This document shows, one piece after another, positions 12,344 to 62,832 of a DNA stretch of 64,000 nucleotides; the stretch's first letter is position 1, and every line of letters begins with the position of its first letter. The stretch is taken from the NCBI RefSeq assembly GCF_002113885.1, contig NW_018480040.1:124001-188000 (forward strand), in the 5' to 3' direction. The position numbers and the translations under genes were made by a program. The stretch comes from Mizuhopecten yessoensis. Lineage: Eukaryota. The notes below the pieces were generated by a model, which worked only from the letters and a program-made list of their open reading frames with translations, made no database searches and was not told the DNA's origin.

Positions 12344-14605
12344 ATGTACTGGTCGTTGGCTGTCGCCGTGTGCCTGATTGGGCAGGTATGTTATTAACGT
12401 ACTCCAACAAAAATATACACAAGGTGCACTATAGATCTTTCATTTGTAACATAGGGTATCATGTTGTCCTTAGTATATTGGATGTGTGCTTTGTTTCTTA
12501 TTTGGCCTTATGTGTTGACAATATTGTTTATACTTGAACTTCGTTTAACTACCTTAATTATCTTTATATATAAAATATATTGTATTTTTTCTTAAAACAT
12601 AATCTGTTTGGATTGGTGTTTATTTCTTTCTAATACATGGAGGAATTGTTATGATTTTCAGCTTAATTCCATATACATTTCACGAGTATGGCAGATCATT
12701 AATATTTCCTGCGAGACAAAAAAACAACATAAGTGAACATTTTGGTATATTCTACTATGCAAGTAATATCTAAAACTCTAGAATGGCGGACTCGTTAGTG
12801 CAACCAAATAGTTTTGGAGATGATAGCTTAATCGTTGGCGCTATATTTTAATGATGTTACGCCTGACAAGAAATCTGCACATTTTAAAAGGTCAACTTGA
12901 AACAATAGTACATGTTTTCTTATATCAGGTGATGTTTTCTTCAAAGAATGGCATCAATAGGTTAGTTAGAAAATATATCCTAGTTGATGTAGCGATGACT
13001 TACCTAAACAGCTATTTACTTTACTGTCGCTTCACATGATGTGTTCAAAAACAGTTCTGGCATCTCAAAGGGATATTTACCACTGACAGATATCACCCTT
13101 GATATCAGTCACAGTGTGAAAGATAACGATTTCATTACGCTGATAGAGTTCAACTTATATATAATTCAATTATCGAACTTATATCTGAAAAAATATAATT
13201 GATCATTAAATGAAGATGTTGTTTGAAATAAAAAAAGAGGTGTACATTTTATACTTCCTTTTTTGTAGCCGCTATTTTTTGTATTCCTTAACTAAATAAG
13301 CACAAAATAGCAAGTAGGTGTTTGCAAATGACAGCAATAGTGATAATTGACTCTTTGAGTGATCGTATATAGTCAAATCAGATTTCATTTTCCTTCAACT
13401 GACAATTGTTTAAATAATGTTAATTGCATCATGTCTGGTTTTAAAAGACACTTGCTGTGCTGTAAAAACAGAATTCATTTGATTGATTTGTGATTTTATT
13501 TTATATACAGATATCTGGATTTACTGTATTTCAAGAAACAGCAACACCATCATTTCTAGATGAACTTACAACACAAGAACCAATGCCACCAACCACCCAG
13601 CGTGTCATCGACGCAAACGAGTTCGACCAGGCTTTGTTTTTGTATGACGCTCCGACGGTATGTACCCGTTAAGAAAAAAAGAAAAAAAATGGTTTTTCTA
13701 CAATTTCGGTCCCTGGTATCACCGATGAGGCCTAGAGGAACGGAACAGCTGTAAAGTACAGTGTAAATCATGTTTAGCATACTTTATATACATGCATTAT
13801 CAAATTTTAAAGGTCCATTGTGTGAATCTTAGGTTCATCGTTTTGATATACACTAACCTGTATACATGAATTTCTTTCTCCATAGCATCAACTGGTTATG
13901 AAGCTTGGGCATTACTGTTACATTCATGGCGTCACGTCATCGTCACAGCAATTAGTACATACAGCAGATGGACTTTTAAAATTCGAAGTAAGTAAAAGTA
14001 CAGCATATACCTTCATCAACTGACAATAGCTTTATCAAACATAGAGTGAAAATGTAATGGCCTGTGTCATTTCATTTTTGTACAAGTCCATGAATGAACA
14101 CTTGCCAGACCCATCATATTGTTTCGCTTGTAATAATATGTTCACTGTTGATCACGTGTAGTGATATTCAACAGTTATGTGACATATGTTTCAATGTACA
14201 AAATACCTATGAACTTTATGGACAAGTCCCTGTGACAACTAAATATCATTTAGTACATACAACATATAAGCCTCAATAAAATAAAATAGTGTTTACACTA
14301 CTTGTAGAATCTGTATATATGGATAAAACTTTTACCAATTGGTGTCTTTCGAATTTCTGTTTGAAGTTTAAGGCCAAAACTGACCTGCTTGTGTCGAGGG
14401 GCGGTTAAGCCTGAACAAAGAAGCTGATTGACTTTTTTATTTCCAGAGTATCTTGATGTACCTCGTAGCCGCTGGTATGCATACCCAGATGACCCATGCA
14501 GATGCTAAGAGGTTAAGCGTGCCCATTGAACACTTTTGCAGAGGACATGACATACAGGTCGTGTCAAGGATTCACCATAGCACTACCAAAAGTACAATTG
14601 TGTGA
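12344..14605 (+). CDS. Gene A: secreted BRICHOS-like protein, 149 aa; exons 12344-12385, 13511-13657, 13886-13987, 14447-14605
   Basis: All introns GT-AG, phase 0. MYWSLAVAVCLIGQ|ISGFTVFQETATPSFLDELTTQEPMPPTTQRVIDANEFDQALFLYDAPT|HQLVMKLGHYCYIHGVTSSSQQLVHTADGLLKFE|SILMYLVAAGMHTQMTHADAKRLSVPIEHFCRGHDIQVVSRIHHSTTKSTIV*. AATAAA overlaps the stop. Exon structure is shared with four paralogues. Confidence 0.9.
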
Positions 14606-15619
14606 ATAAATTAGAAACAGGTTTTTCAAACAAGTATTTCATTATTACTCTTCCTTATTCGGCAAACATATTGGTACATCGAATTGAAGTTGCAAACACA
14701 CAATGAAACATAAAGCATGTTAAAATATTGCACATATTTCAAAAACTTTTCGAATTATAATTATCCTATGGAGTTTGCTATAAGTGTAATTTCGACTCAA
14801 CAAACTATGATCCTGTTAACAAAATGGTTAATCTATTGTTAATATATAGAGCTCTGAAATTAAAAGCATATTGTTTTGTTTAGACATTAAGGGCATATTT
14901 TATTAACAAATATATCACCATTATGAGTAACAAAATATATCGAATTCGTTCGATTAGTAAGGAATTTCTGCAATACCAGGTATGTCCTCGACTAATCGTA
15001 TACTAATACTTTGTTCCCTAGTTTTGGTCACTGTTACAATTCTTGACGGTGTACTTTGATCAAGTTATTTGCAACACGATTAGTCCAATGAGTACCAAAT
15101 CCTTTGCAAAGCATCCCAAGCGTCCAGCATATTTGTCGACAAACTTCTTGTCATTTTCTTTATGTGACCTTTATGTTTTCCATTGGGTTTATTTCAAGAA
15201 TAATATCCCCGTTATCGTTAAATTCTATTTCTACTTGGTTCGAAAATATTTTTGAGTTCAACTTATTATAACAGTATGCAAAAAATTATAGAAAGATAGA
15301 TTCCTTTTAAGTGAACGCTTAACATTCGGAAACCATCCTTAATCGTTTCGAGTAATTCCTTTGGTATCGCAGTTAAAACAACTTCTGAAAAACGTTAGCC
15401 GCTTTTTAACTCGTGTTTACAGATATAAATGTCCGTAGGGTTAAGAAAACATTAATGACACTTTTATTGCTTCTGTTAATATTGGTTTGCCTATTAAATA
15501 ATAATTGTTGTCACCCGATAAATCAATGAAACAAATTAGATAACAGCGCTATCTCTTATTTACAAAAAAAAGAATGCAAGAACAATAAAATAAACTCTTA
15601 TACAAAATAATAAACAACT

Positions 15620-15622
<3 letters not shown>

Positions 15623-15678
<56 letters not shown>

Positions 15679-15686
15679 ACACACAC
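15623..15686. repeat. (AG)n(AC)n microsatellite
   Basis: About 26 AG units; the right-arm equivalent (~48917-48931) has only about 7. Confidence 0.95.
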
Positions 15687-17150: not shown

Positions 17151-17298
17151 ATACGGATTGAATCTGGATTTTTCCAGTGTCCATGCAATTACGAACGGGC
17201 TAAAATTTACTTACACACCACATGAGCGGCCGTAGCGAAGTAAATTTGTACCCATTCATATTTGCATGAACATTGGAAATCCCAGATTCAATCCCTAT
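17151..17298. mobile_element. ~150-bp hairpin of a Crypton-N-like non-autonomous element
   Basis: ggattgaatctggatttttccagtgtccatgcaa ... ttgcatgaacattggaaatcccagattcaatcc. Confidence 0.6.
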
Positions 17299-21445: not shown

Positions 21446-24400
21446 ATGCAGGCCATTTTCATTGTCGCTTTCTGCGTTATCGGACAGGTGGCGTATATAT
21501 TTTATTATTTTAATAGTAGTAAACACTATTACCTAATATTAACTTTCACCTTGATATTATGTTTTAAATGTTGTTCTGTTTGTGTTTTTATTTTCTTTCA
21601 AAATTAGAATAGAAAAAGAAAAATCAACTATATTTACATTCAAAGCAGATTTGCTTGCAAGTGGCAAAGTTACGTTTATGTACTGTAATAGTAAACGATA
21701 AAATGTAAAGGTGAGATAGACAATCTTCCAGTTAAAATCATATTACACTTGGATGATAATATTTTAAAAGAAAGTAATAATAATAAACTTTATCCAAATG
21801 AAAAAAATAAATGAAAATTTAGAACTTTAGAATTGAAACGTCGTTAGCCACTTGTAAATCTTTAACACAAGATATTTGAGGCTCTTGTAAGTCTTTTAGG
21901 CAGCCGGTACAGACGAACACCCTTGATTCTGGAAGAGATCAAAATTGGTCCCATCTTGCAACGGAAGAATAAGATACATCAACTCTTTGATTGGAGAACA
22001 GCAGGGGTTATGTTATACTGTATAATTAAAATAAGTTGATATACATATCATTGATAGGGTTCATGGTCTAATGTTCTCTGTAAGGATCGTATATGTACCC
22101 TGTTATGAGCTCGAATGGTTACAGAGATCTTGACAGCGAACAACGGACCACTTACCCTAAAATGCACTTAAGACCTGTGGGTTAATTTTCTAGTTCTTCA
22201 TAGTCACATTCGCTAAAACTAAATGATGATGCGTTTACACATCGATCCCTCTTTGTTCAAATGATGAGTTTAAATGATAAAATATGTCGTCATAATTGCC
22301 GTTTACGTAGATATATAACACCTCAACGTTTGTGTCCTGTTCCTTCTCCCGTTATCATCCCGAATGTTTTTTCTTGTCATATTGTTCTTTGGCAAATCCC
22401 CGATGATAAGAAAACATGTTTTCTGAAGTAAAATAAACCGTATAAGATATTTGCACATTCTTATGTCTCTTTCTACAGATATACGCTGCACCTGCTTCTT
22501 CAAACGAGAACAACGAAATAGACGCAGCATCATTCTACTACGATGGCCTTTCAGTACGTGCTAAATAGTGATTTAGACCTAAGAACAAAACATATATACC
22601 AAGAGTACTTATATTAATATGCAATGTGTATAAGTGTATCATAAAATAAATACTATAGAAATGGATTTGAAAATTCGAAAAGCAATACATTTCTGAAATT
22701 ACTGCCAACATTGAATGTTAATATTCATTTACATATAAGTAGGTAATTATGTGTTTTATGTATATTTACTATTTCACCCTTCAGGGAAGAACAATTGTAC
22801 AGCTTGGTTTTTTTCATTATTATTTGAGTCTACTATTTATCATACGTTTATTATTATCTCTTAACTTATATATTTAGATTTGATAATATGCTTTAACACT
22901 ATTGCTGATATGTATGAAGATTACACGTATGAAAAAAATATTAAATATCCAACAATAGTTAAAAATGCTTTAAATGGTTCATTGTATGGAATCTACGACG
23001 GTAGATATGGTTTGACCGATATATCAAGGCCACACCCAGTCGGAGATTCTATACAGCGCTATTGAAAGATAAGAGGGCTATCCATTGCTCCGGTTTCCTT
23101 GTACTTAAAGACACAGTTTTGTTATGTTTGTCCTATATTGGAAGCAAACTCGACTTACAAAGTGTTTCTATACTATGCTATAAGTGCATTTGTATGAGAT
23201 ACCTATATAAAATATAAAACTAATACAAAGATCAGCTCAGCAGAGGAAGGCTTATTATACTGTTGGATTTTTTTAAAAATCTTCTAACAGATATTGTTTG
23301 TTGATGTCTACAAATGATGTATTTTAATCACAATGGTTTATAAAGGTTAATATGAATATTTTTGGAAAATATACATACGATGATAAATAACTTTTACCAA
23401 CCTTCTATCAACAAATACGCTCTATTTGTTTCGGACTTAAAAATGAGTTTCAGCTTCGTATTCGAGTAATTTTAATAGCAGTGAACACCAACACTATCTG
23501 TATTATTGTTTTTAAAAGATAACCATGTTTATCAACTTCACAAAGGTCGATTCCCCTCTGAATAGGTCAATATTTAAAAGGCGCGGGCACATATAGAGTC
23601 ATTACCAAATTATTTTATGAAAGTTTTCAGCCAATAAGTTTAAAACTTTTTTGAGAAAGTATTAAATGTCACGATAAACAATTTGCCAATACCTCTCTCC
23701 TCCCTGATTGCATATTAATCAATTGGTTCTACAGGACTTACAGTCAAAATATATTTAAAAGTCCTTCTTTACTGCCAAGACTTTTAAATTTCTAAAAGCT
23801 TAATATTAAGAGTACATCGCTAAATCATACGCAGCTTGACCAAAGTTAGTTGACCAGACATGAAAACCAATATATTATCCGAATTTTGATTCCATTTGTA
23901 TCCACTGATTTGACTCATTGAGTACCGCGTATAAAATGCCACACGAAAAGCTTAAAAAGTAAATAATTGTGAACAACGGTGTATTCATACCATAAAAAGA
24001 CATATGGATGGATATTATATACAATTTTATATAAATTGATAGAAGTATAATAAACAGAATCAACCTACTAGAAAATACTTTTCTAATCATAACTAACGTG
24101 TGTTTTGTTATAACGATTACGTAACAAACAGAAATCATTGATATTTTGAGACAGTTAGCTAGGTTATATAGCTAAATTGAATCATATACACATATTGAAA
24201 TATTTGGGTGGTTGGGTGGCGCAGTGGATATCGCTTGCCTTTCACCAAGGCGGCCGGGGTTCGATTCCCCGATCAGACGTGAAAGGTATGGTGTCACCTG
24301 CCCGACCACGTGGGTTTTATCCCGGTACTCGGCTTTCCTCCCACATTAAGACCGTTTCCAAATGTGTTATTATTTTACATGTGTCGATTTGGGAAGTTTC

Positions 24401-25260
24401 AAAACACTGAAACACCATTTCTAAGTTTCAGAAAATATAGCTTATACATGTCGGTAAAAAAATAGAAAAAATACTTAAAAAATCAAGTTTATATATTGAA
24501 ATACGAAACTGTATATATTGTTAAGCCATTTCTCAATTTATACCAACCACGATTGTAATCGCACAACGGTCGTCCATCGTCCGCACACATGTGCGCAAGG
24601 AATAATCGTCCTGATATTTATCGTTTGCACATCTTTCACACACCGTGCACACATCACGAGCATATCGCACATCGTGGAACGTTGTTCGATCCCATAACTG
24701 TAACTCGGAATAAAAAAAGGAATCGGATACCATACTGATTATAGCAATATCCATGCTATAAATCACATTGCATGTGTGATTTGTTTTGTTTTATATACAC
24801 TCAACAAGGTCTTTCTTTTTTTCTAATAGGGCTTCGTGGCACTGAAACTTGGTCATAATTGTTATCTATCGAGTCAAGAGAAGAACAGCCCAGACATTCA
24901 CACAGAGGAGGGGCTACTGGCGGCAGAGGTATGATTATTTTAAATTAAATACCTACCAAATTAAATATTGAATTTGCGTAGATATGTACTTTTCAAGCAT
25001 GGCGGAAATTCCAGTTGTTAAGCAATGTAAAAAGCAAACGAGATGACAACACAACTGTGTTGAATAAAGTGATGATAAAATAACTTTTTGTTTTTTAGTC
25101 AAGAATTATGATATTGCTGAGAAGGGGAATACAAACACCGCTGTCTCACGCTGAAGTCAACCAGTTAAGCCTACATTTAGAGCGCATGTGCGCAGGGTCA
25201 TCTGTCTACCAACTTCATCACCATCATCCTCCTTCGACAACAATGGTTTCTTTAATCTAA
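21446..25260 (+). CDS. Gene B: secreted BRICHOS-like protein, 125 aa; exons 21446-21487, 22479-22553, 24830-24928, 25099-25260
   Basis: TATAAA at 21361; phase-0 GT-AG introns. MQAIFIVAFCVIGQ|IYAAPASSNENNEIDAASFYYDGLS|GFVALKLGHNCYLSSQEKNSPDIHTEEGLLAAE|SRIMILLRRGIQTPLSHAEVNQLSLHLERMCAGSSVYQLHHHHPPSTTMVSLI*. Confidence 0.88.
24206..24353 (+). mobile_element. tRNA-derived V-SINE in intron 2 of gene B
   Basis: A-box gggtggcgcagtgg, B-box ggttcgattccc, V-domain gtgggttttatcccggtactcggctttcctcccaca. Confidence 0.8.
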
Positions 25261-27181: not shown

Positions 27182-29089
27182 GGACAACCTCTTCCACAAT
27201 TGCAACTAACGAATGGTACCGGATATATTTATCCTGAATATATCAATAACACGTCTAACCACAAATACAATCAACATGGAAAGTACAGCTTTCCAAACAA
27301 TAACGGTACACATGGCAACCATAGTTTTCCTTATCACAACAGTACTCATGGCCACCATAGTTGCCCTCATCAACACGGTAACCATAGCAACAAGAGTTAT
27401 CCTTATCAAAACGGCACCCATCGCATTCACAGTTACGCTTATTACAACGGCGTCCAAGTGAACCATAGTTACCCTCACTACAATGGCACTTACGGCAACC
27501 ACAGTTACCTTAAACCACAACGGCACCCATGTCAACCACAGTTTCCCTCATCACAACCGCACCTTAGGCAACCACAGTTTCCCTCATCACAACGCAGTTT
27601 CCCTCATCACAACCGCACCTTAGGCAACACGGCACCCGTGACAACCACAGTTTCTCACATCACAACGGCACCCATAGCAACCATAGTTATCCTCATCAAA
27701 ACAGCACCCATGGCAACCACAGTTACCTTAAACCACAACGGCACCCATGTCAACCACAGTTTCCCTCATCACAACCGCACCTTAGGCAACCACAGTTTCC
27801 CTCATCACAACGGAAGTCGTAATACAATACTTATCCGCGATTATAAACGGCACCCGTGGCAACCACAGTTTCTCACATCACAACGGCACCCATGGCAACC
27901 ATAGTTACCCTAAACCACAACGGCACCCATGGCAACCACAGTTTTTCACATCACAACGGCACCCATGCTAGCCACAGTTGTCTTCATCACAACGGTACTT
28001 ATGGCAACCACAGCTATTCCAACGCTAACGAATCACGCATCCTCTATGATGAATCAACCTTTCTTTATGACAGGTGGACGGTTGGTGATAATCTAACCAT
28101 CTATAGTATTCAATGTTACGTCATTCTTATTTAAGGCGTTGTTTTTAATAGCATTCAGATAATAATAATATACGGAACAATAAAGCCACTCGTGTATTAA
28201 TCATGAAATACTTTATCAATTTTTGTTTTTGCAACATTCCTTATACATAGTTCATCCGTCATTTTTTCTGTATACATCATACAATCCCTGAAATGGGTTG
28301 TGATAATGCAAATACTGCGGTACCTCAAATTTGATTTCATAATGGTTTTCTTTACGTCTATCAATTTATCTCAATGTATAAAATCATAAATATTGTGTTT
28401 TGATATCTAATGAAGATAGCAACATATTTTTTTGAATAAACAAGCCTTTTAAGTATATATAAATATGTTTTGCAACAGTGTAATGTTTGCAATTGTTGCT
28501 AAAAGATATAGATGATAGTGGTTCCTGCAACGACAGAATGTCATCAATCGGCATACATTTTAGTATACCGAAGGCCATAAAAAGAAGAATGACGTGTAAA
28601 CGAAATGATTTTATTTCACAGCACACTATGGCCATGCATCTCGGCAATATTTACTATATCATGATATTGACACCTCACCAGTAGAGCATGTTCCTCACGA
28701 ACAATAGCCTAACATCGTTAGATGTATGTCCATATTTTTTCTATTCTAAGACATTTCTGAAAGCAGCAGATATGACTATGTTTTCCGTGTGTCTGACCAT
28801 ACTTCAGTCTTATATTTAGTCAATGTAGGTAACCTTTCTTTTATTTTGCAAGGGCGATTGAGTTTCTCTTCCTCTTTCCCGTCACTGTATATCAGAATTT
28901 TAGGTAATAAATTTGAATCCAGTTGGTGATATATGTACATGCAAAATAACATCTTATTTTTAGCTGCAACTGATGAAGATGTTGAGTACGGGACATAACT
29001 CCGCTATAGAGTTCTAGACTGTACTCTTCCCCGGAGACAAGTTCGCTCCCATTTGTCATGGAACAAACTGTGTATTGCGCGCCAACTAA
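27182..29089 (+). pseudogene. C': pseudogene copy of gene C (exon remnants 27182-28080, 28622-28723, 28964-29089)
   Basis: Exon 1 and TATA deleted; exon-2 acceptor changed aatag>aatat; frameshifts in the expanded repeat; conserved Cys changed to Tyr (NIYYI vs NSCYI); premature TAG at 28682 and 29015. Confidence 0.9.
27290..28020 (+). repeat. 36-bp coding-derived minisatellite (cacaacggcacccatggcaaccacagtttccctcat = HNGTHGNHSFPH), about 20 units
   Basis: Tandem units read directly; only about 5 units in intact gene C (39185-39370). Confidence 0.9.
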
Positions 29090-30504
29090 AAGGAAACACG
29101 TAAGGACGGGCCTATTTAATTGTAAATATTTTACCATTTACTGGTCTATCTGTGTTGTCCTCCTTACCCACTATGAGTTCAAAACCTGTGTTTTAGAGTA
29201 TAAATATAGACACAATTATAATCGAAAAAAATNGAGCATGCTCTGTTGGTAAGGTGTCAATATCATAAGATAACAGGAATTGCCGAGATACAATGCCATA
29301 GTATGCTGTAAAATGGAATTAATTCGTTATCGCTTCATTCTTCATACACACATGCCAATCTTATAAAATAATTATCTCGATTTTTCAGCAAGAAAATGAA
29401 ACATTAAACTTTTACAAACACACATTTTATGTTTGAAATGTATATTGCTATCTTCGAACGTTAGATATCAAACGATATGTACAATATTTATCATTTTTCA
29501 CTTAATTGCTGTAATAAATTGCTAGACGTAAAAGAAACCATCATGATATTGACACCTCACCAGTAGAGCATGTTCCTCACGAACAATGGCCTAACATCGT
29601 TAGATGTATGTCCATATTTTTTCTATTCTAAGACATTTCTGAAAGCAGCAGATATGACTATGTTTTCCGTGTGTCTGACCATACTTCAGTCTTATATTTA
29701 GTCAATGTAGGTAACCTTTCTTTTATTTTGCAAGGGCGATTGAGTTTCTCTTCCTCTTTCCCGTCACTGTATATCAGAATTTTAGGTAATAAATTTGAAT
29801 CCAGTTGGTGATATATGTACATGCAAAATAACATCTTATTTTTAGCTGCAACTGATGAAGATGTTGAGTACGGGACATAACTCCGCTATAGAGTTCTAGA
29901 CTGTACTCTTCCCCGGAGACAAGTTCGCTCCCATTTGTCATGGATCAAACTGTGTATTGCGCGCCAACTAAAAGGAAACACGTAAGGACGGGCCTATTTA
30001 ATTGTAAATATTTTACCATTTACTGGTCTATCTGTGTTGTCCTCCTTACCCACTATGAGTTCAAAACCTGTGTTTTAGAGTATAAATATAGACACAATTA
30101 TAATCGAAAAAAATGTATTTATTACCTCATAGAAATATTACATGACGTAAAATAGTTATATATAATAGTATGGACAACATGGTCATCAAACACATTCGAC
30201 CATTGTGTATGCCTAAACCTTGGTAAATGACTTGGAATTAATTGTATGATGTGTTTAAGAAATTGATCATTCTACTGGCAATATTCTGGTTTCGAGATAA
30301 AAATATATTTAATTTAAATAAGGACAAATGAGACAATATTTGATTTTAGTATGATTATTTATACAAAATAACCATTTTATAAAACCAAATCCTAATTTCC
30401 GTTTTCATTCTTTTATATTCACTACATTGTGATTACGACTGAGAGTTAAAAATCCAATTAAAGACGTACAAAAATACTTTCTTGACTGCTTATGTATTCG
30501 CTGT

Positions 30505-30680
30505 TACGGACGGGTTTCGACTTTCCTATCGTGAACCTTCCCTTTATTGATAGTAACAGCACTGCTACCTCTACTATGCTGTCGCACATGATTCGGTACT
30601 TTAAATCTTGCTCCGGATATCATGACTTCTGTGATAGATGTGGACTGCTGCCGGACAAATTTACAACACAGGTTTTCTAA
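30505..30680 (+). mobile_element. Penelope-like retroelement RT C-terminal fragment (repeated at ~32505-32680 +)
   Basis: FDFPIVNLPFIDSN...SHMIRYFKSCSGYHDFCDR resembles the Penelope-type FPIVNFPF-SNIP...SQLIRY...C..Y.DF motif. Confidence 0.7.
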
Positions 30681-30881
30681 AGATAGAAGTTGTGTTAAAA
30701 ATAAGGTCGGTGCTTTTGATAACGGGTCTCCCTAGTTCTATCGATTTTGAGTTCAAGTTAAGGTTTTGTTGAGACTACAACATGCAGCTGGTTCGTTCTT
30801 CTAAGGCTCATCTGTGATGATAGGGGTCAAACAGATGGAAATCAAAATCGGTCGAAACCACTGTTGAAACAGATTGCTATN

Positions 30882-31300
30882 AAGTCGGAAAATCAATAGC
30901 GTATTTGTGTCCCGTACTCAACTTCTTCATCAGTTGTAGCTAATAAATAAATGAAAATACGATGTTGTAATGCATGTAGCACAATCAGGATTCAAATTAC
31001 TTACTTAGAATTCTGAATACATTAAGGGGAAAGAAGGAAAAAATCTCAATCGCCCATGTCAAATTAAAGATAATTATATACATGCATTGACTAATCCATT
31101 AAATTAATATAAGAACTTAAATGTTTTCTAACACACAGAAAACAAAATCATATTTGCTGCTTTTAGAAATATATAAGAGTGAATAAATATGGACATACCT
31201 CTAACGATGTTAGGCCATTATTCGTGTTGAGCATGCTCTGTTGGTAAGGTGTCAATATCATAAGATAACAGGAATTGCCGAGATACAATGCCATAGTATG
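30882..31300 (-). pseudogene. Orphan copy of gene C exon 3 (31300-31199) and partial exon 4 (30939-30882) within the tandem unit
   Basis: HTMALYLGNSCYLMILTPYQQSMLNTNNGLTSLE; exons 1-2 are cut off by the ATCATGA junction. Confidence 0.75.
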
Positions 31301-33505
31301 CTGTAAAATGGAATTAATTCGTTATCGCTTCATTCTTCATACACACATGCCAATCTTATAAAATAATTATCTCGATTTTTCAGCAAGAAAATGAAACATT
31401 AAACTTTTACAAACACACATTTTATGTTTGAAATGTATATTGCTATCTTCGAACGTTAGATATCAAACGATATGTACAATATTTATCATTTTTCACTTAA
31501 TTGCTGTAATAAATTGCTAGACGTAAAAGAAACCATCATGATATTGACACCTCACCAGTAGAGCATGTTCCTCACGAACAATGGCCTAACATCGTTAGAT
31601 GTATGTCCATATTTTTTCTATTCTAAGACATTTCTGAAAGCAGCAGATATGACTATGTTTTCCGTGTGTCTGACCATACTTCAGTCTTATATTTAGTCAA
31701 TGTAGGTAACCTTTCTTTTATTTTGCAAGGGCGATTGAGTTTCTCTTCCTCTTTCCCGTCACTGTATATCAGAATTTTAGGTAATAAATTTGAATCCAGT
31801 TGGTGATATATGTACATGCAAAATAACATCTTATTTTTAGCTGCAACTGATGAAGATGTTGAGTACGGGACATAACTCCGCTATAGAGTTCTAGACTGTA
31901 CTCTTCCCCGGAGACAAGTTCGCTCCCATTTGTCATGGAACAAACTGTGTATTGCGCGCCAACTAAAAGGAAACACGTAAGGACGGGCCTATTTAATTGT
32001 AAATATTTTACCATTTACTGGTCTATCTGTGTTGTCCTCCTTACCCACTATGAGTTCAAAACCTGTGTTTTAGAGTATAAATATAGACACAATTATAATC
32101 GAAAAAAATTGTATTTATTACCTCATAGAAATATTACATGACGTAAAATAGTTATATATAATAGTATGGACAACATGGTCATCAAACACATTCGACCATT
32201 GTGTATGCCTAAACCTTGGTAAATGACTTGGAATTAATTGTATGGTGTGTTTAAGAAATTGATCATTCTACTGGCAATATTCTGGTTTCGAGATAAAAAA
32301 TATATTTAATTTAAATAAGGACAAATGCGACAATATTTGATTTTAGTATGATTATTTATACAAAATAACCATTTTATAAAACCAAATCCTAATTTCCGTT
32401 TTCATTCTTTTATATTCACTACATTGTGATTACGACTGAGAGTTAAAAATCCAATTAAAGACGTACAAAAATACTTTCTTGACTGCTTATTATTCGCTGT
32501 TACGGACGGGTTTCGACTTTCCTATCGTGAACCTTCCCTTTATTGATAGTAACAGCACTGCTACCTCTACTATGCTGTCGCACATGATTCGGTACTTTAA
32601 ATCTTGCTCCGGATATCATGACTTCTGTGATAGATGTGGACTGCTGCCGGACAATTTACAACACAGGTTTTCTAAAGATAGAAGTTGTGTTAAAAATAAG
32701 GTCGGTGCTTTTGATAACGGGTCTCCCTAGTTCTATCGATTTTGAGTTCAAGTTAAGGTTTTGTTGAGACTACAACATGCAGCTGGTTCGTTCTTCTAAG
32801 GCTCATCTGTGATGATAGGGGTCAAACAGATGGAAATCAAAATCGGTCGAAACCACTGTTGAAACAGATTGCTATAAAAAATTACGATTTTGTAGTTTAT
32901 TAAGTGTGTAATTTGTTGTAAATTTTGGTTAACTTTTGGTGCCGAATTCTATACAGAATCTCCGAAATGAGGGCATGTAAACCAGTGTGGATAGTCCCAT
33001 TTAACCAGGATAGTGGTAAACACTATCGTCTATGGAAAATCATTTGGTTCTGCGGTCCCTATAGAAAGATGCAGGATATGACGTTTTACACCATTCGAGC
33101 GTCCCTGGAAACCGGATGATGGGACTCGCTAGCATATTTCTTGTTGTGAATCTAATCATGGATGTGTTTTGGCAGAATTTAGAGGGAAAATTAGTTGCAG
33201 TAAGATACTATGATGGAAATATACACCCATGTAGAGTGTGGAGGGGGGCATGGACCAGGGAGGATATGGGCGTATTGTGGTTAGATTGCCAAATGGACAC
33301 ATAAAATATATATATCAAAAAATAACAAAGACCAGTTTTTAAGTTCTCAATATTTTAATGTTGCATTTCTTTTTCTCAATCATAACTCTTTATGATGTGT
33401 CTTTCACATAAATTTCTTCACCAATTTTACAGTCATGTAATTTGAATATTTTGTGTCTCTTATTTCTTTTCTGAATTTTACACCACAATGATGTCTTTTT
33501 TGTTC

Positions 33506-38123: not shown

Positions 38124-40152
38124 TCAGCTAGCGCGCAGTAGGTAGTTGGTTCCATGGCATAAGGGAGCAAACTTATCTCCGAGGGAGAGTAAAGTCGGAA
38201 AATCAATAGCGTATTTGTGTCCCGTACTCAACTTCTTCATCAGTTGTAGCTAATAAATAAATGAAAATACGATGTTGTAATGCATGTAGCACAATCAGGA
38301 TTCAAATTACTTACTTAGAATTCTGAATACATTAAGGGGATAGAAGGAAAAATCTCAATCGCCCATGTCAAATTTAAGATAATTATATACATGCATTGAC
38401 TAATCCATTAAATTAATATAAGAACTTAAATGTTATCTAACACACAGAAAACAAAATCATATTTGCTGCTTTTAGAAATATATAAGAGTGAATAAATATG
38501 GACATACCTCTAACGATGTTAGGCCATTGTTCGTGTTGAGCATGCTCTGTTGGTAAGGTGTCAATATCATAATATAACAGGAATTGCCGAGATGCAATGC
38601 CATAGTATGCTGTAAAATGAAATTAATTCGTTATCGCTTCATTCTTCATACACACATGCCAATCTTATAAAATAATTATCTCGATTTTTCAGCAAGAAAA
38701 GGAAACATTAAACTTTTACAAACACACATTTTATGTTTGAAATGTATATTGCTATCTTCGAACGTTAGATATCAAACGATATGTACAATATTTATCATTT
38801 TTCATTTAATTGCTGTGATAAATTGCTAGACGTAAAAGAAACCATCATGAAAACGAATTTCGAGGTACCGTTTATTTGCATTATTACAACCAATTTAAGA
38901 AATGGTATGATGCGTGCAGATTCATGCGTAATAAAATCTATAAACTAGCAATATTGTAATGAGAAGTAAAGATGATAAAGTATTTCATAATTAATAAATG
39001 AAAGGTTTTTTTTTTGTTCTGCATGTACATATTTATTTAATGCTTTTTAGAAAACTACGTTTAAATTATCAGAATTCGAATGACGTAACAAACAATCTTA
39101 CAAATACTTATTATCACCTACCGTCCACCTGTCGTAAAGAAAAGTTGACCCATCATACACGATGCGAGATCCGTTTGCGTTAGGATAGCTGTGATTGCCA
39201 TAGGTACCGTTGTGGTAAGGGAAACTGTGGTTGCCATGGGTGCCGTTGTGATGAGGGTAACTGTGGTTGCCATGGGTGCCGTTGTGGTTAGAGAAACTGT
39301 GATTACCATGGGTGCCGTTGTGATGAGGATAATTGTGGTTACCATGAGTACCATTATGGTTTGGAAAGCTGTAATTTCCATGTTGATTATGGTTGTGGTT
39401 AGACGTGTAATTGACATATTCGGGATAGATATATCCGGTACCATTCTTAAGTTGCCATTGTGGAAGAGATTGTCCCTATTCGAAAAAATGTTAATTACAA
39501 ATAAAATGAAACAGTAAAACGTGTGACAGCGAGTTACCACCTTTACTTTAAGTGACTATTGCAGATAAGGGAAGTCAAATCGAGGCTAATTGACGACCAA
39601 ACATGATAAGGATAAGTACACAATATGGTGCGTCCTTTTATCGATATCCGTAACTTTCAAATCGTAAGTTAATGTAGGATATTTACGTCCATAATTACCA
39701 CTTCTGTCATTTTGATTGATTTAACGCTCAAACTGTACAAAAATACCATTTTGACTTTGTGTTCCATCATGCTCATGTAGTGCCAAAATAAATCCTTAAA
39801 TCGTGCAAATGGTTTGCTTCAGGAACACTCATGAACTAATAAAAGCAAACATTAGTGTTAACTTCTTTGAAGTATGAATGAAAACACTCCTACAAGACAT
39901 TTGTGTATACCATTCAGAAAACTTATCACTTTTAAGAAATTGCTACACGGCCAGGTTCGCCTTTTGTAAGACAACATGTAGACAACTCCTCCGAGCGGCT
40001 AATTGTGTTTATCTGACTCTATTTATCAAAGAAATCACATTATTGATGAACAATAGAATGCTCACGAATTATTATCTATGTGTATGTTTAAGTTTGCTTA
40101 CCAATGCCACGACAAGCAAGAACACTGCAGCAATCAAGTAAATGTTGTTCAT
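38124..40152 (-). CDS. Gene C: secreted His/Asn-repeat BRICHOS-like glycoprotein, 210 aa; exons 40152-40102, 39475-39122, 38609-38508, 38249-38124
   Basis: TATAAAAG at 40198-40191; phase-0 GT-AG introns. MNNIYLIAAVFLLVVAL|GQSLPQWQLKNGTGYIYPEYVNYTSNHNHNQHGNYSFPN(HNGTHGNHxx(P/S)x)x5...NGSRIVYDGSTFLYDRWT|HTMALHLGNSCYIMILTPYQQSMLNTNNGLTSLE|LQLMKKLSTGHKYAIDFPTLLSLGDKFAPLCHGTNYLLRAS*. Confidence 0.88.
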
Positions 40153-42634: not shown

Positions 42635-42763
42635 CTGTCCGATAACGCAAAAAGCGACAATGACAATGCCCTGCATGCTTGATGTCCTATCAATGGAAGA
42701 GTTGTCAAAAATGCTGTTAAAATGAAATCCACGGACTAAACTTACTAAGCTTACGTCTATATA
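42635..42763 (-). pseudogene. B': truncated pseudogene of gene B (TATA and exon 1 only, 42676-42635)
   Basis: MQGIVIVAFCVIGQ with the donor changed GT>AT (cagATgtcg); left-arm 22332-26800, containing exons 2-4, is absent here. Confidence 0.88.
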
Positions 42764-43695: not shown

Positions 43696-44675
43696 TGTTC
43701 GTGTTGTCTGACAGATATCAGTATCTGGATGAACGCCAACATGCTTAAACTTAATCAGGAAAAGACGGAACTAATCGTCTTTTCCCCAAAGTGTCAGCAA
43801 ACAATGGCTCTCCAGCTCAAGGTTGGTGCCAGAATTATTGAGACTGTTCCAGCTGTTAAAAACCTAGGGGTATACTTTGACAGTTCTCTGAACATGGAGA
43901 AACAAGTGAACGCTATTGCCAAATCCTGTTACTACCAGATCAGGAACATCGGCTGTATTCGGCAGTTTCTAACTGCAGATGCATGCAAGATTTTGGTGCA
44001 TTCACTTGTTACCTCTCGGTTGGATTATGGTAACGCCCTGCTCTGTGGTATATCTGACAAACTAACTAGTCGTCTGCAGAGGGTTCAGAACACTGCAGCA
44101 CGGCTAGTTACTCGTACTCGAAAGAGAGAGCACATCACACCTGCGCTTTATTCGTTGCACTGGTTACCTGTACGATACAGGTCGCAGTACAAAATTCTGG
44201 TATACACATACAAGGCACTGAATGGAACAGCTCCTCAGTACCTACAGGAACTTGTTACCCTGTATCAGCCGTCAAGATCACTGCGGTCGGAGTCAGAATC
44301 TTTGTTGTGTGTCCCAAAATCTCGTACTGTGACCTACGGAAACAGATGCTTTGGGAGGGTTTCGGCTACGTTGTGGAATAGCTTACCATCTGCTATTAGG
44401 AAGTCGAATACCCTGGCCAAGTTCAAGAGGGACAAAAAAAGTCACCTCTTCACGTCTGCATTTTAGAATCTTTGCAAAGTCGTCATGTAAATACCACCCT
44501 TTTATTTGTTCAATTATGTGCACATTGCTTGTTAAATGTATGAAAGTGATTGCAAGCCTTTGTTGTTTGTTTTCACAATTATAACCATTACTATATGTTG
44601 TAAAGCGCCTTAGAGTAATTTTACAAATTATATAGGGCGATATATAAATGCTGTATATTATTATTATTATTTATT
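43696..44675 (+). mobile_element. 5'-truncated L2-clade LINE, ORF2 C-terminus intact to stop 44466, with (TAT)n tail
   Basis: LKLNQEKTE, VKNLGVYFDSSL, LVTSRLDYGNALL, LQRVQNTAARLV, LHWLPV, LWNSLP; 3' gtaaagcgcc...atataaat...tattattat; the empty site is seen on the left arm at ~20460-20480. Confidence 0.92.
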
Positions 44676-49925: not shown

Positions 49926-52482
49926 TCACACAATTGTACTTTTGGTAGTGCTATGATGAATCCTTTTCAAGACAAGTATGTCATGTCCTGCGCAAAAGTG
50001 TTCAACATCCCTACTTAATGTCTTAGCATCTTCATGGGTCATTTGGGTATGCATGCCAGCGGCTACGAGGTACATCAAGATACTCTGAAAATAAAAAGTC
50101 AGTCAGTTTCTTTTTTCAGGCTTTACCGCCCCTCAACACAAGAATGTCAGTTTTGGCCTTCAACTTCAAACAGAAATTCAAATGACACCAATTGGTAAAT
50201 GTTGTATCAATAGATATATATATTCTACAAGTAGTGTAAACAGTATTTTATATTATAGAGGCTTATATTTTGTATGAACCTAATGATATCTAGTTGTCAC
50301 AGGGACTTGTCCAAAAAGTTCATAGAAATTTTGTACATTGAAACATATGTCACATAACTGTTGAAGATCACTTCCACGTGATCATAATATGGTTAACAGT
50401 GAACATAGTATTACAAGCGAAACAATATGGTGGGTCTGGCAAATGTTCATTTATGGACTTGTACATGACACAGGCCATTACATTTTCACTCTATGTTTGA
50501 TAAAGCTATTGTCAGTTGATGAAGGTATATGCTGTACTTCTACTTACTTCGAATTTTATAAGTCCATCTGCAGTATGTATTAATGGCTGTTGCGATGACG
50601 TGACGCCATGGAGGTAACAGTAATGCCCAAGCTTCATAGCCAGTTGATGCTATGGAAAAAGAAATTCATGTATACAGGTTAGTGTATATCAAAACGATGA
50701 ACCTAAAATTCACACATTGGACTGCTCCTGTACAATTTGATAATGCATGTAGATAAAGTATGCTAAAAACGAATAACACTGTACTTCACAGCTGTTCCGT
50801 CCTTCTAGGACTCACCGGTGATACTAGGGACCGAAATTATAGAAAAACCATTTTTTTTTTTTTTTTAAATGTATCATTTTTTTTTTAAATTTTCTTAACG
50901 GGTACATACCGTCGGAGCGTCATAAAAAAACAAAGCCTGGTCGAACTCGTTTGCATCGTTGACATTATGATGACGAATGGTGGTTGATGGCATTGGTTCT
51001 TGTGTTGTTAGCAGATCTAGAAATGATGGTGTTACTGTTTCTTGCAATACAGTAAATCCAGATATCTGTAAAAAAAAAACACACACACACAAATTACACA
51101 AAAGAATGATTTATTTACCGCACACCAAGTGCTCCCTTTATAAAGGTTGTGGTAATATTCTGGGAGCATATCATATGCAACCACTGTCTCAGCCAAATTT
51201 CATAAGTATTATAAAGTTCTTACTGTATATTGCACGAATAAATAAGTATTTTTTCATTATACACGCATTTAACCAATTAAACCCTAACACAAATCAAGTA
51301 ATACGATAAATATATGTGTCAGATCAGTAAAAATTAAAGCAGGCTTGATTATATAGAAATGGGTCAAGTATTCATAAAAATATCATGGTTGATGTTATTT
51401 GCAAAGACCATTCTATTCATTTTTGTTTACAAAAGAACTTTAACATAACTAGTTTTATTTAATTAGTAAAGAAATTAAAAATGAATATAGGTATTTAAAA
51501 CCCGCGAAAGGTAAGTCATTCAACACTATCTAAACACCTCTTTTTAACCAAAACCAATAAACTATAAAAAAACAAATACTGTTTCATTATCAAAAATAAT
51601 AATTACACATTTAAGGATAAACGTTCGATGATTGATGTTTTTATCCTAGTCATTAGAAAAAATCATCGTAATAAAACCGATATCTTTCTCACTGCTCAAT
51701 ATTCGTTTTTTGGTTTACGCCAATCAAAACTTCTAATCCCCACTGCATCAGAAGCACAGGGTTTTTGAAACACATGTAGGTGAGGCGACTGAGAAATTAT
51801 TAGTTCTGTATGTACGTCTTTGCTTTAAACACCAGTATATTTTTTCTTACTCTAATATTGATCATTTTGCAAAAAAGATTTCACCATATTTTAGAAGAAA
51901 ATTGTATGACTGTTTGTATATAGTAGACTATTTGAAATAGTGAGCAATCTTGTTGTCAGACGTGATCGCATTCTATGAATATAGCGCCAAAGATAAGCTA
52001 TTACTGTATATCTCAAACTGTCTAGATTCACTAAGGAGGTTGTCGTTCTAGAGAGTTTAAAAGATCACGTGTATAGTAGGGTATACCAAAATGTTCACTC
52101 ATGCGATGTACCCACTGGAAATATTGGTAATCTACCATACTCATGAAATGCATATAGTATTAAGCTGATAATAAACAAAATTCCTCTATGTAATAAATAG
52201 AAATAAACACTAAATCCAATAAGATCATATTTAAAACAAAAAACAATACAACTTATTTTAAAAGGTAATTAAGTTTGTTAAACAAAGTTTTAAAATACCA
52301 CGGTGTTAACACATATGGCCCAATTTGAAACAAGCACACATCCAATATACTAAGGACAACATGAGCCCCTATATTACAAATGAAAGATGTAAAGTGCACC
52401 TTGTGTATATTTTCATCGGAGTGCGTTAATAACATACCTGCCCAATCAGGCACACGGCGATAGCTAACGACCAGTTCATCAT
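49926..52482 (-). CDS. Gene A': secreted BRICHOS-like protein, 152-153 aa, inverted duplicate of A; exons 52482-52438, 51065-50910, 50649-50548, 50084-49926
   Basis: (M)MNWSLAIAVCLIGQ|ISGFTVLQETVTPSFLDLLTTQEPMPSTTIRHHNVNDANEFDQALFFYDAPT|HQLAMKLGHYCYLHGVTSSQQPLIHTADGLIKFE|SILMYLVAAGMHTQMTHEDAKTLSRDVEHFCAGHDILVLKRIHHSTTKSTIV*; splice sites intact; AATAAA at the stop. Confidence 0.9.
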
Positions 52483-59364: not shown

Positions 59365-62300
59365 TCAACCAATTGGCATCATTGTTGTAGTGTGATGGTG
59401 ATGAGGTCTTGACACGACGAACACGTCCTGACTTGCGCACATGTGTTCAACGTGGATGCTTAACTTTAAAACATCGTCATGGGACATCTGTGTATGGTTA
59501 CCCTTGGCTACGAGAACCATCAAATCATTCTAAAAATAGAAAAAGCAATTACATATTTTATCACATAACTGACCCATGTTACTATGTCATACGGCCATGT
59601 CATAAATATGGTATTACACACGTGTAATAAAACCTAGGTGCTGCAAATGGACGAAACCTTAAGAACATATTCCTTCGCCACTACAGGTATTTAACTGCAG
59701 CTTTTTTGCGGACAAATTTTAATGGTTTTGCTGTGAAATGAATTAAAAATGTTTATTTTCTCATTATTATATTCATTGCATTTCAAACTGTTCATTATTT
59801 AAAAAAAAATCCGGAACTACTTTGCGTTGCGCGAAACGACAATACTATGATCGGAGTACTTTGGTTTTGAGTCAGTTAATTTATCTTTTTTCAAATTATG
59901 AAAGTAATGTGATAAATAGGATCCTACATTCGTGTCCTTATCATATTGAATTTATTAAATCGTTCAATAATTTGATTTGACACTCGCCTGAAGTCTCGTG
60001 TCATATCAAATTATTGAACTCGTTTAACAAATTCAATATGACATGGTAGCTCATGGAAGATTTCTCTATAAATCAATTAATCACATTGTTTTCAAATGTA
60101 TGAACTGAGGCTGTTGATTACTTTCTTCCTTTTTGATTGATACATCAATTGTCTGTTGATGATGGTTGTAAAAAACTTTACTTACCTCGAGTTTTAAAAT
60201 CCCGTCTGTTGTGTGTACCTGTGGTCGTGTGGACATCTTTAGCTTCTCAATGTAGCAGGTATCTCCTCGCTTCATTACCATTTGATGCTGCGGGAAAATT
60301 CACACACATATATATATATAAAGTAGTGCAATAAAGGAATTCAAGATTAAAATATCAATGTCCCATAAATAACGGAATTGACTCCTTAAAGCAGTTCTAA
60401 TAAAATAATATTCAAAAATATACAGATACGTGAATAACATCGATTCGAAACATGGCATGTTATTAACTCAATATGGTAGATAAGCAGTTCAAAAAGGTTT
60501 AATTCCGCAGTAAATCCATATTAAAATTCAAAACTAAGACTACATTAGTCCTATAAATATCATGAAAAGCGCAATTTAATACCTTGATTGGAACTATGTC
60601 TTCGGGATTCATGTGTAATCTAATTTGTATTCAATAACAAAGGAGAAAATGAGACATTTGCTTGGATGCTCAAAAAGTTTGAGTGAAAATTTAAATTTAG
60701 ATTTTCTTTACGTTTTTCGGCCATGATTAGCACCACAATTGGAACACCATATCACAGACTATGAAACTGATTTTATTTCAACTAGTTGATGTGCCGATTG
60801 CAACAAAATATATTGCTTTTATAAATACCATACGGAACTACAATTGCATAGTCCCGGGTAAGAATGGGGTGTAAGACATTTCTATCATACACCTCAGTTC
60901 ACGTGACGTGACATCACAATGGCTCAACAATGACGTGACCTCACGAATTTGGAACTCTCCGATACCACAATGCGGAAAAACTCTGTTTGATAATAAGCGG
61001 TATGCTACATTGATGTAAATCTGGCTGACATATTCGTTTTCGTCAAAAAGATCTCATGAGAAACATTTATATTTTCAAAATGGTAGCCAGTCCACACGCA
61101 TTTTCATGGTTTCTAAGCTTATTGTGGTAGTTGGAATGAGAGAAAAATACTAATTCATGCCCAAGGGTGTAGGATAGGGAATTCCTACCCTCGGAATTTC
61201 CAAGGCAAAACTATCCGAATTTGAAAACCCCTCGGGTGGAATTTCCCTATCCTACACCCCTGGGCATGAAAGAGTCTTATAATACTTTTCGCCTATAAGG
61301 ACCAGAAATCATCATTTAAACATGCTTACAATTCACCCCTTTAAAATACTCCAAAATTTTCATCGACATACGTCGTTTTTCCTTGTTTTCTGATATGTTT
61401 ACTTTGATTTCTAAAACTGTTCATGAAAACAAAACTTTCTGTGGAAATGCTGACAAGTATATCCTTTGGTATACTTTCATAGGAACATATCTTTAAGTAC
61501 TATATTCGAACCATTTTCTGACCGTGTACCAATTTGGGCAGCATACCTATAGTGGTAGCGCGACGTTACATTCGTAACTGATGTCGGTTCATCAACAGTT
61601 TGTGTAACCTCGATATTTTGTTCTAAATATATCGTTTACTTATAAATGTTCCCTAACAGGTACATACCGACAGAGCGTCATAGTAGAACAAAGCTTGGTC
61701 AAACTCGTTAGATTCGTGAGGACGATGAGGATGGTGAGTAGATGGAGGTATTGTGGTCATACAACATATCTGTAAAACAAAATCACATATTCCACAAATA
61801 AATGCCTTCTATAAGACAATGACAGCCATCCCTAAATCCGAAACGAGATTATTTTTCTCGTCAGCTTAATCAAACAGATTATCATATATCGGTATTTCAG
61901 TAAAACTTGAGCTGTAAAATGGCGATAACATACATAGTATTGATAAGTCAGTATTTGTTTTCTATGTTTACACATACCCCTCCGCATTAAAGCCATTTTG
62001 GTCTCTGTGGGGTATAACATGTAGATAGATAGATAAAATTGTAATGAGTTAAAGTAAAGGATACAACACTGCATAAGATATAATGGCGAAGTAGATTCCG
62101 CACATATTTTTTTCTACTTAGAGTAATCTCCCTTTTACATAGATTATGAAGCAATCAAAAGGATTGCTTATTGTTTATTTCGCAGGGTTTGGCGTCCATA
62201 ATTTGGACAGACATCTTGATGTTCGATACATTTGTATGTATATTCCTGAATGGCTCCATTGTTAAAGAGTAGTCTTTGTAATGAAGAGGTTCTTAGATTG

Positions 62301-62832
62301 ACTCCTGAATTTTTTTTTGTTTTTAATATAATCAAAATTTTGAACAAATATAATTCTGTAAAATGCATTCTAACATGTCATTTTTATGAAAGAATTCTTT
62401 GGAAACAGCTTCAACAAACATCTAACAACAGTGCGATAAAGCTATCTGGTTATGGTATAGCTTAACTTGCTGGTCAGTGAGAGATATTATATTTATATAA
62501 CAATCTTGGTACGTCCATGGGTTAAATGTTTGATATCTGACAAGGAGAGAGATAGTATATCAAACTACCACAGTGATTACCTTCAGGAACAAAATTCTAT
62601 TATTCTATTAGGACAAATAAAGTGTCAACAAATATCTTAAATATGGAAACCAAGTAAACACCAAAACAAGATGGAGGACAGCAAGAACATCTACAACACC
62701 AATAAAAAAGCCGACGCCAGATATTCCAAAAGAATACATTCACCCTGCAACACATGCAATTTCAGTCCAATGTCTTTAAAAGCAACTTACCTGTCCAATC
62801 AGACACACGACGACAGCCAAAGCACAGTACAT
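59365..62832 (-). CDS. Gene D: secreted BRICHOS-like protein, 136 aa; exons 62832-62791, 61769-61668, 60287-60186, 59529-59365
   Basis: TATATAA 62907-62901. MYCALAVVVCLIGQ|ICCMTTIPPSTHHPHRPHESNEFDQALFYYDALS|HQMVMKRGDTCYIEKLKMSTRPQVHTTDGILKLE|NDLMVLVAKGNHTQMSHDDVLKLSIHVEHMCASQDVFVVSRPHHHHTTTMMPIG*; AATAAA at 59360-59355. Confidence 0.9.
59916..60070. mobile_element. Hairpin non-autonomous element (Crypton-N-like) in gene D intron 3
   Basis: tcatattgaatttattaaa...ctcgcctgaagtctcg apex...tttaacaaattcaatatga. Confidence 0.55.
61154..61283. mobile_element. Hairpin non-autonomous element (Crypton-N-like) in gene D intron 2
   Basis: ttcatgcccaagggtgtaggatagggaattcc ... ggaatttccctatcctacacccctgggcatgaa. 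Confidence 0.6.

What the first reader, a model, noticed from the sequence alone, without database searches (positions are those of the whole stretch)
12344..62832. Hidden cluster of secreted 'solo' BRICHOS-like proteins with variable His/Thr-rich linkers (5 intact genes, 2 pseudogenes)
Seen: five spliced genes share one architecture. Exon 1 is a signal peptide (four end in C-[LV]-I-G-Q), exon 2 is variable and ends F-[LFY]-Y-D, exon 3 is 99-102 nt with C-Y-[IL], and exon 4 has L-[SG]-x5-[FML]-C. All introns are phase 0. Established: a conserved Asp and these two Cys, in these contexts, are the BRICHOS hallmark (proSP-C, Bri2/ITM2, gastrokines, polychaete arenicin/alvinellacin precursors), a chaperone domain for beta-prone clients. 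Inference: these are compact BRICHOS proteins (~53-54 aa between the Cys) with no C-terminal beta-hairpin peptide. Instead, A, A', B and D have His/Thr tails (IHHSTT, LHHHHPP, PHHHHTTT) and exon 2 varies from 25 to 118 codons. They could be an undescribed mollusc family of extracellular, possibly metal-binding chaperones acting in trans (mucus, shell, byssus or immunity).
Basis: partly seen in the sequence, partly recalled or inferred. Interest (0 to 1): 0.9.

Follow-up and report, generated by a model that had tools for sequence, protein, structure and literature searches.

The report
Bivalve client-less mini BRICHOS gene cluster
Five working scallop genes and two broken copies encode small secreted proteins that fold like the BRICHOS anti-amyloid chaperone domain but lack the sticky peptide such domains normally carry; the family is widespread in bivalves, I found no paper on it, and its job is untested.

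Summary
In detail: five intact four-exon, phase-0 genes and two broken copies in an inverted duplication, with at least seven more candidate paralogues elsewhere in the genome. Database names identify the genome as Mizuhopecten yessoensis. Gene A is spliced and polyadenylated. The genes are not hidden: four match RefSeq 'uncharacterized' or misnamed entries exactly.

BRICHOS homology is well supported. Two AlphaFold models (pLDDT 91 and 85) rank proSP-C BRICHOS (2yad) first. An Argopecten orthologue scores 24 bits on PF04089 (cut-off 25). One phase-0 intron lies three codons after the conserved Asp, as in human SFTPC.

All 23 family members compared end 10-41 residues after the second Cys, with no further Cys, so no client hairpin exists. 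The modelled core is about 85 aa and lacks strand beta-1. Relatives occur in seven other bivalve genera. His/Thr-rich N-terminal segments are family-wide; the His tails were seen only in scallops.

No paper was found. Chaperoning in trans is my leading reading, at about 0.4; metal binding and tissue are untested. This scan noted a different BRICHOS-like peptide precursor elsewhere in this genome (unchecked).

The parts
12344..14605 (+). Gene A, 149 aa. Exons 12344-12385 (signal peptide), 13511-13657, 13886-13987, 14447-14605. Asp60, Cys74, Cys128. = XP_021342003 (LOC110442636)
   Evidence: joints 13657/13886 and 13987/14447 and poly(A) at 14630 in RNA-like contigs; model pLDDT 90.8
21446..25260 (+). 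Gene B, 125 aa, shortest N-terminal segment. Exons 21446-21487, 22479-22553, 24830-24928, 25099-25260. = XP_021342006 (LOC110442639)
   Evidence: PF04089 14.2 bits, E 0.052; full mature model, tails coil; Foldseek 2yad first
27182..29086 (+). Pseudogene C-psi, inverted twin of gene C: exon-2 remnant about 27182-28080 (expanded 36-bp repeat, frameshifts, acceptor AT), exon 3 28622-28723 (TAG, Cys to Tyr), exon 4 about 28964-29086 (TAG); exon 1 not found
28658..32880 (.). Near-identical (97-99.8%) extra pieces of C and C-psi exons 3-4 on both strands, next to the single Ns at 29233 and 30881; assembly artefact or very recent local duplication, unresolved
38124..40152 (-). Gene C ('E' in my calls), 210 aa. 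Exons 40152-40102, 39475-39122 (12-aa His/Asn/Gly repeat, 13 N-glycosylation sequons), 38609-38508, 38249-38124. = XP_021341994, misnamed 'homeobox protein 2-like'
42635..42676 (-). Gene remnant B-psi: exon 1 only, 93% identical to B exon 1, donor GT changed to AT; intron-1 homology runs to about 41772; exons 2-4 not found
49926..52482 (-). Gene A', 153 aa, 84% identical to A. Exons 52482-52438, 51065-50910, 50649-50548, 50084-49926. = XP_021342000 (LOC110442635)
59365..62832 (-). Gene D, 136 aa. Exons 62832-62791, 61769-61668, 60287-60186, 59529-59365; orthologue of Argopecten XP_069122543
10193..55343 (.). Inverted segmental duplication: left arm about 10.2-30.9 kb (A, B, C-psi), right arm about 55.3-36.9 kb (A', B-psi, C), mostly 75-89% identical

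Best explanation
These genes encode a bivalve family of secreted, stand-alone, minimal BRICHOS domains. Shown or strongly supported: signal peptide, a variable hydrophilic His/Thr/Pro-rich spacer, an 85-residue BRICHOS core (beta2-beta3-beta4, long helix 1, beta4', helix 2, beta5; no beta1), and a stop 10-41 residues after the second Cys, so no covalently attached client hairpin. Inferred: with no client of its own, the domain is secreted whole and binds beta-strand-prone segments of other co-secreted proteins or peptides, as an ATP-independent chaperone that limits amyloid-like aggregation in a secretion (mucus, glandular product or matrix). The His/Thr-rich flanks would be glycosylated, metal- or pH-sensitive tethers that hold it there. 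My odds: BRICHOS homologue about 0.93; no C-terminal client about 0.95; chaperone in trans as the main role about 0.4.
For: Fold: the model of A (pLDDT 90.8) ranks 2yad first by Foldseek (prob 0.9, E 0.18) and by VIA-align among 48,161 chains (Z 6.6, rmsd 2.9, 67 aa; Z 7.2, rmsd 2.4). The model of B does the same (prob 0.98-1.0, E 0.012). ESM Atlas structure search: three unnamed mollusc clusters, then SP-C (TM 0.67) and ITM2 (0.61); the feature search gives BRICHOS or its OAF kin for all ten best named hits. Sequence: PF04089 24 bits, E 4.7e-5 for the Argopecten orthologue of D; 4 of 14 members match weakly. Gene structure: phase-0 intron at Asp+3 here and in Argopecten, Mytilus and Mercenaria, and in SFTPC (Asp105; exon 4 = 37 codons ending at c.435). 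No client: no Cys after the second Cys in 23 of 23; B's tail is coil. Purifying selection on the core (dN/dS 0.17-0.29 for D/F-type pairs). All BRICHOS domains studied so far inhibit amyloid of non-native clients (PMC10182729).
Against: No functional data. No Foldseek E-value reached 0.001, and Z 6.6-7.2 lies in the range the tool calls common for unrelated folds; the case rests on several lines agreeing. No window protein passes the Pfam cut-off (A, A' and C give no hit). The functionally important Asp is Glu in Mercenaria, Ruditapes and Dreissena members, while family-specific residues in helix 1 (His-Thr, Gly, Glu) are as conserved or more so, which may point to another function. Helix 1 is modelled as long and well ordered (pLDDT above 93), whereas client binding in BRICHOS is thought to need a mobile helix 1. 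No client or tissue was identified.
Confidence: 0.42

Rival explanations
1. Repurposed fold: a BRICHOS homologue that no longer chaperones but binds a small ligand, metal ion, glycan or microbial surface at a new site made of the acidic His/Glu motif before beta2 and the His-Thr...Gly...Glu motif of helix 1.
For: His88, Thr89, Gly92, Glu97 and Glu51 (A numbering) are invariant or nearly so, while the Asp is not; beta1 is missing and helix 1 is rigid in both models; gene birth, death and inversion and a patch of replacements near helix 2/beta5 between A and A' resemble recognition-protein families.
Against: The motif residues could be purely structural (helix capping and packing); no coordinates were available to test whether they cluster in space; gene C lacks the acidic motif and the His; A/A' dN/dS of 0.63 rests on few sites.
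Confidence: 0.27
2. Structural or matrix protein: the His-rich segments cross-link through metal ions in mucus, byssus or shell matrix, and the BRICHOS core is only an oligomerising, protease-stable anchor.
For: N-terminal segments hold 18-33% His in most members across bivalves; gene C has a long repeat with 13 sequons; A is deep in two runs and absent from two others, as for a gland product. His-metal cross-linking in byssus is from my own knowledge.
Against: A and B have no His in the N-terminal segment and B's is only about 10 residues; the core, not the His segment, is what selection keeps; no tissue or proteome evidence.
Confidence: 0.16
3. proSP-C-like cis chaperone or carrier: the client is the N-terminal His-rich segment, released as a histatin-like antimicrobial or metal-binding peptide.
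For: proSP-C also ends 8 residues after its second Cys and has its client N-terminal (PMC9714404); it is the best structural match.
Against: The segment is 9-106 aa, unconserved, hydrophilic, coil in the models and nearly absent in B and several paralogues; a dibasic or RxxR site occurs in only 1 of 15 N-terminal segments scored.
Confidence: 0.1
4. Not homologous to BRICHOS: a small alpha/beta fold with a chance two-Cys pattern.
For: Foldseek E above 0.001, Z below 8, 15-17% identity, no Pfam hit above cut-off.
Against: Five lines agree: Pfam near cut-off, language-model features, two aligners on two models, Asp/Cys register, and the identical intron position.
Confidence: 0.05

Closest known systems
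proSP-C (SFTPC) BRICHOS domain, PDB 2yad
   Same: Best structural match (Z 6.6-7.2, rmsd 2.4-2.9 A over 66-67 aa); the ends of the alignment put Asp60 on Asp105 and Cys128 on Cys189 if ungapped; the domain is at the C-terminus; phase-0 intron at Asp+3 and a phase-0 exon carrying the first Cys.
   Different: Signal peptide instead of a poly-Val membrane client; no beta1; Cys-Cys spacing 53-54 versus 68; ordered beta4' instead of a long disordered loop; no second disulfide; His/Thr-rich flanks.
Polychaete BRICHOS antimicrobial-peptide precursors (arenicin, alvinellacin, nicomicin, capitellacin)
   Same: Lophotrochozoan, secreted, signal peptide + linker + BRICHOS; tandem multigene families (PMC5431198).
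   Different: No convertase site and no C-terminal disulfide-bonded hairpin; 125-150 aa typical versus 239 for nicomicin; below the Pfam cut-off.
Gastrokines (GKN1-3), ITM2/Bri2, OAF
   Same: Secreted or shed BRICHOS proteins; nearest named clusters by features (GKN1 0.91) and structure (ITM2 TM 0.61); beta4' present.
   Different: They have beta1', beta2', beta1 and a C-terminal beta-rich region bound in face A; these proteins have none.
Unnamed Mollusca clusters of the ESM Atlas (96, 62 and 118 members; 127-150 aa)
   Same: Nearest by features (0.93) and structure (TM 0.72-0.79); probably this family.
   Different: No name, Pfam family or paper; their members could not be read, so membership is not confirmed by alignment.

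Membership tests
BRICHOS domain superfamily | Central beta-sheet flanked by two helices, proSP-C topology | tested here: met
   Two AF2 models; 2yad ranks first in four PDB searches; SP-C TM 0.67 in the Atlas. Predicted, moderate scores; four core strands, not five.
BRICHOS domain superfamily | Five-stranded sheet including beta1 | tested here: not met
   No strand before the Asp-bearing strand in either model; alignment to 2yad starts at residue 97. Model-based, shallow alignment.
BRICHOS domain superfamily | Conserved Asp at the end of beta2 | tested here: met
   Asp in all five window genes and 18 of 23 members, Glu in 5; it ends the first modelled strand.
BRICHOS domain superfamily | Two conserved Cys, in beta4 and helix 2 | tested here: met
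   Invariant in all full-length members; in beta4 and just after helix 2 in the models.
BRICHOS domain superfamily | Disulfide between those Cys | not testable with these tools
   Model coordinates are not returned; needs mass spectrometry or a structure.
BRICHOS domain superfamily | Pfam PF04089 at or above 25 bits | tested here: not met
   Best 24.0 bits (Argopecten orthologue of D); B 14.2; A, A' and C none.
BRICHOS domain superfamily | Intron position shared with a known member (not a formal criterion) | tested here: met
   Phase 0 at Asp+3 in four bivalve genera and in SFTPC by arithmetic. Only one known gene compared.
BRICHOS proprotein architecture | N-terminal signal peptide or membrane anchor | tested here: met
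   Hydrophobic 14-17-residue exon 1 in all five; judged by eye, no predictor run.
BRICHOS proprotein architecture | Convertase site and C-terminal beta-hairpin, aggregation-prone peptide | tested here: not met
   10-41 residues and no Cys after the second Cys in 23 of 23; one KR (A') among 15 tails scored; B's tail is coil.
BRICHOS proprotein architecture | N-terminal aggregation-prone client as in proSP-C | tested here: not met
   N-terminal segments are 0-29% hydrophobic and unconserved. The repeat of gene C was not modelled.
BRICHOS domain superfamily | Anti-amyloid chaperone activity | not testable with these tools
   Needs recombinant protein.

The most novel reading that the evidence does not exclude
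A large, unrecognised mollusc family of natural client-less, minimal (about 85 aa, no beta1) BRICHOS proteins that are secreted to chaperone or control amyloid-like assembly of other proteins in trans, with His-rich tethers giving metal or pH control. It would break the reviewed rule that every BRICHOS protein carries its own aggregation-prone region, and supply the smallest natural scaffold for anti-amyloid work.
Probability: 0.38. Interest if true: 0.82.

Novelty: new variant of a known kind. Interest (0 to 1): 0.63.

Why it matters
A 2023 review (PMC10182729) calls an attached aggregation-prone region a key feature of BRICHOS proteins and lists 14 families, none client-less. BRICHOS domains are studied as amyloid inhibitors, and whether their action on foreign clients is a natural role is open. 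A family with no client of its own, kept by selection across bivalves, makes this testable: either it chaperones in trans, or the fold has a second function. It also misses the Pfam cut-off, so domain-based BRICHOS surveys would be expected to leave it out.

Tried and rejected
Pfam exon by exon: no hits. PF04089 against the genome: nothing, and the control rang nowhere, so uninformative. Word-index search with one exon: blank. PDB by sequence: only a chance AAA ATPase hit. The source names 'homeobox protein 2-like' (gene C) and 'DUF732' (Pinctada) are rejected: neither Pfam family appears. AMP-precursor reading rejected: no hairpin or convertase site. Positive selection between A and A': exons diverge as fast as introns 2-3 (0.09-0.13 versus 0.08) with 8 replacements in residues 115-137, but intron 1 and upstream DNA are about 20% diverged and the window was chosen after the fact, so inconclusive. 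Literature: no paper with the accessions, with 'solo BRICHOS', or describing such bivalve proteins; the library lacks most subscription papers. Tissue could not be read: runs are coded. The script stopped early (15 of 20 rows); one search repeated the key counts on 23.

Full report
Observation. I rebuilt all five genes from the DNA. Each has four exons, AG/GT ends, phase-0 introns and no internal stop: A (+, 149 aa), B (+, 125), C (-, 210; printed as E in my calls), A' (-, 153) and D (-, 136). Exon 1 is a 14-17-codon hydrophobic signal. Exon 2 varies from 25 to 118 codons and ends three codons after an Asp. Exon 3 (33-34 codons) holds the first Cys, exon 4 the second. An exon-3-like pattern occurs 6 times in the window and never in 20 shuffles. 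Each gene has a TATA-like site upstream and a poly(A) signal downstream. The cluster is an inverted duplication (A, B, C-psi | C, B-psi, A') followed by D. C-psi has frameshifts, stops in exons 3 and 4, a lost Cys and no exon 1; B-psi is exon 1 with a dead donor.

Expression. Contigs of two runs that are probably RNA cover only A's exons 2-4, join them at the predicted GT-AG sites at depth 230-900, and one carries poly(A) at 14630. Two other RNA runs under the same species label gave no reads. That fits tissue-restricted expression, but the tool warns that a zero is no test without a control stretch. Exon 1 of A and the other genes were not tested.

Not hidden, only unnamed. An exon-3 profile search of 1.84 billion proteins returned full-length proteins identical to my models of A, B and C, and later A'. 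Their sources name Mizuhopecten yessoensis and call them uncharacterized, or 'homeobox protein 2-like' for C. D was not looked up.

Family. The genome holds at least seven more candidate members: F just beyond the window, G on C76557, four on C5475 and one on C4925. Not all were modelled in full. Relatives occur in Argopecten, Pinctada, Mytilus, Mercenaria, Ruditapes, Mya and Dreissena, often as neighbouring paralogues. The four-exon, phase-0 plan is identical in Argopecten, Mytilus and Mercenaria. Argopecten has an F-D-B arrangement and the tree pairs D, F, B and G with Argopecten genes (D and F pairs weakly), while A/A' is a younger pair. The core is under purifying selection: dN/dS is 0.27 for D/F, and D versus its orthologue has saturated dS with dN 0.20. 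The ESM Atlas has three unnamed mollusc clusters of 96, 62 and 118 members as nearest neighbours.

BRICHOS homology. No single test is decisive, but five agree. (1) PF04089 scores 24 bits (E 4.7e-5; cut-off 25) on D's orthologue and 14 on B. (2) The ten best named language-model hits are all BRICHOS or its OAF kin. (3) AlphaFold models of A's core and of mature B (pLDDT 90.8 and 85.3) put proSP-C BRICHOS first by Foldseek and VIA-align (Z 6.6 and 7.2). These scores are moderate by the tools' own notes. (4) The aligned ranges (model 11-95, chain 97-197) place Asp60 on Asp105 and Cys128 on Cys189 if the ends are ungapped; the number 189 is from memory. (5) SFTPC exon 4 is a 37-codon in-frame exon ending at c.435 (PMC2063649, PMC9360361), so the intron before it follows residue 108, three codons after Asp105 (PMC6714457; PMC9627735 treats D105 as the conserved Asp), in phase 0. 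That is the position of intron 2 here.

What differs. Of the five features used to admit OAF (PMC9714404), the signal, the Cys pair and the Asp are present; the convertase site and the hairpin peptide are not. All 23 members end 10-41 residues after the second Cys with no further Cys, and B's tail is coil. The N-terminal segment is hydrophilic, His/Thr/Pro-rich and unconserved, unlike the poly-Val client of proSP-C. Both models lack beta1 and have a long, ordered helix 1 and a beta4' strand, giving a core of about 85 residues. Family-specific residues (an acidic His/Glu motif before beta2; His-Thr, Gly and Glu in helix 1) are as conserved as the Asp or more so; the Asp is Glu in five clam members. 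His-rich N-termini are general; His tails were seen only in scallops.

Mechanism. The most likely reading is a secreted chaperone acting in trans (0.42), because every BRICHOS domain tested inhibits amyloid of foreign clients (PMC10182729) and nothing else in these proteins is conserved. This step is inference. Rivals are a repurposed ligand- or metal-binding fold (0.27), a metal-cross-linked matrix protein (0.16), an N-terminal cargo peptide (0.10) and non-homology (0.05).

Novelty. The review says BRICHOS proteins carry an aggregation-prone region and lists 14 families. Ten literature searches found no description of this family; the library is incomplete. I class it as a new variant of a known kind, interest 0.63.

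Limits and operator rules. Spliced models were searched exon by exon, by reference. The joined step was left out for D, F, G and the other paralogues: their joined forms were built only in local scripts for frame checks, selection counts and the tree, and were sent to no search. Full-length searches and folds used only database proteins returned by the tools. The Ns at 29233 and 30881 were not filled or looked up (one script set them to A only to count a pattern).

Noticed in passing
window 28658-32880: Three near-identical copies of C-psi exon 3/4 DNA and inverted pieces 97-100% like gene C, next to single Ns; may be a misassembly or a very recent duplication at the centre of the inverted repeat.
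   Followed up: partly
window 14447-14605 versus 49926-50084: A and A' differ by 8 replacements in residues 115-137, around helix 2 and beta5; exon 4 is more diverged (0.126) than introns 2-3 (0.077). Possible local diversification, not established.
   Followed up: partly
window 39122-39475 (-): Gene C carries a 12-aa His/Asn/Gly repeat with 13 N-glycosylation sequons, expanded further in C-psi; RefSeq misnames the gene homeobox-like.
   Followed up: partly
L028:642-4064 (contig C76713, 188642-192064): Sixth intact-looking gene F just beyond the window, head-to-head with D; the same head-to-head pair exists in Argopecten, and divergent neighbours of similar size flank the Mytilus and Mercenaria genes.
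   Followed up: partly
L029-L031, L051-L053: Further paralogues on C76557, C5475 (four) and C4925; those on C5475 and C4925 mostly share a His/Glu-rich motif (H-E-H-[SP]-E) before beta2, a possible metal site.
   Followed up: partly
window 43684-44466 (+): 260-aa open frame that by eye resembles the C-terminal part of a LINE-type retrotransposon protein; Pfam gave nothing significant.
   Followed up: partly
window 2310-3077: 31-bp minisatellite, about 20 copies.
   Followed up: no
window 3986-6371, 7687-8636, 34434-36463: Dispersed repeat, about 80% identical between copies, probably a decayed transposon.
   Followed up: no
P0014, P0025, P0026, P0027, P0007: Mercenaria, Ruditapes and Dreissena members have Glu at the BRICHOS Asp; Glu or Ser make up only 0.3% of single BRICHOS domains in PMC9627735.
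   Followed up: no
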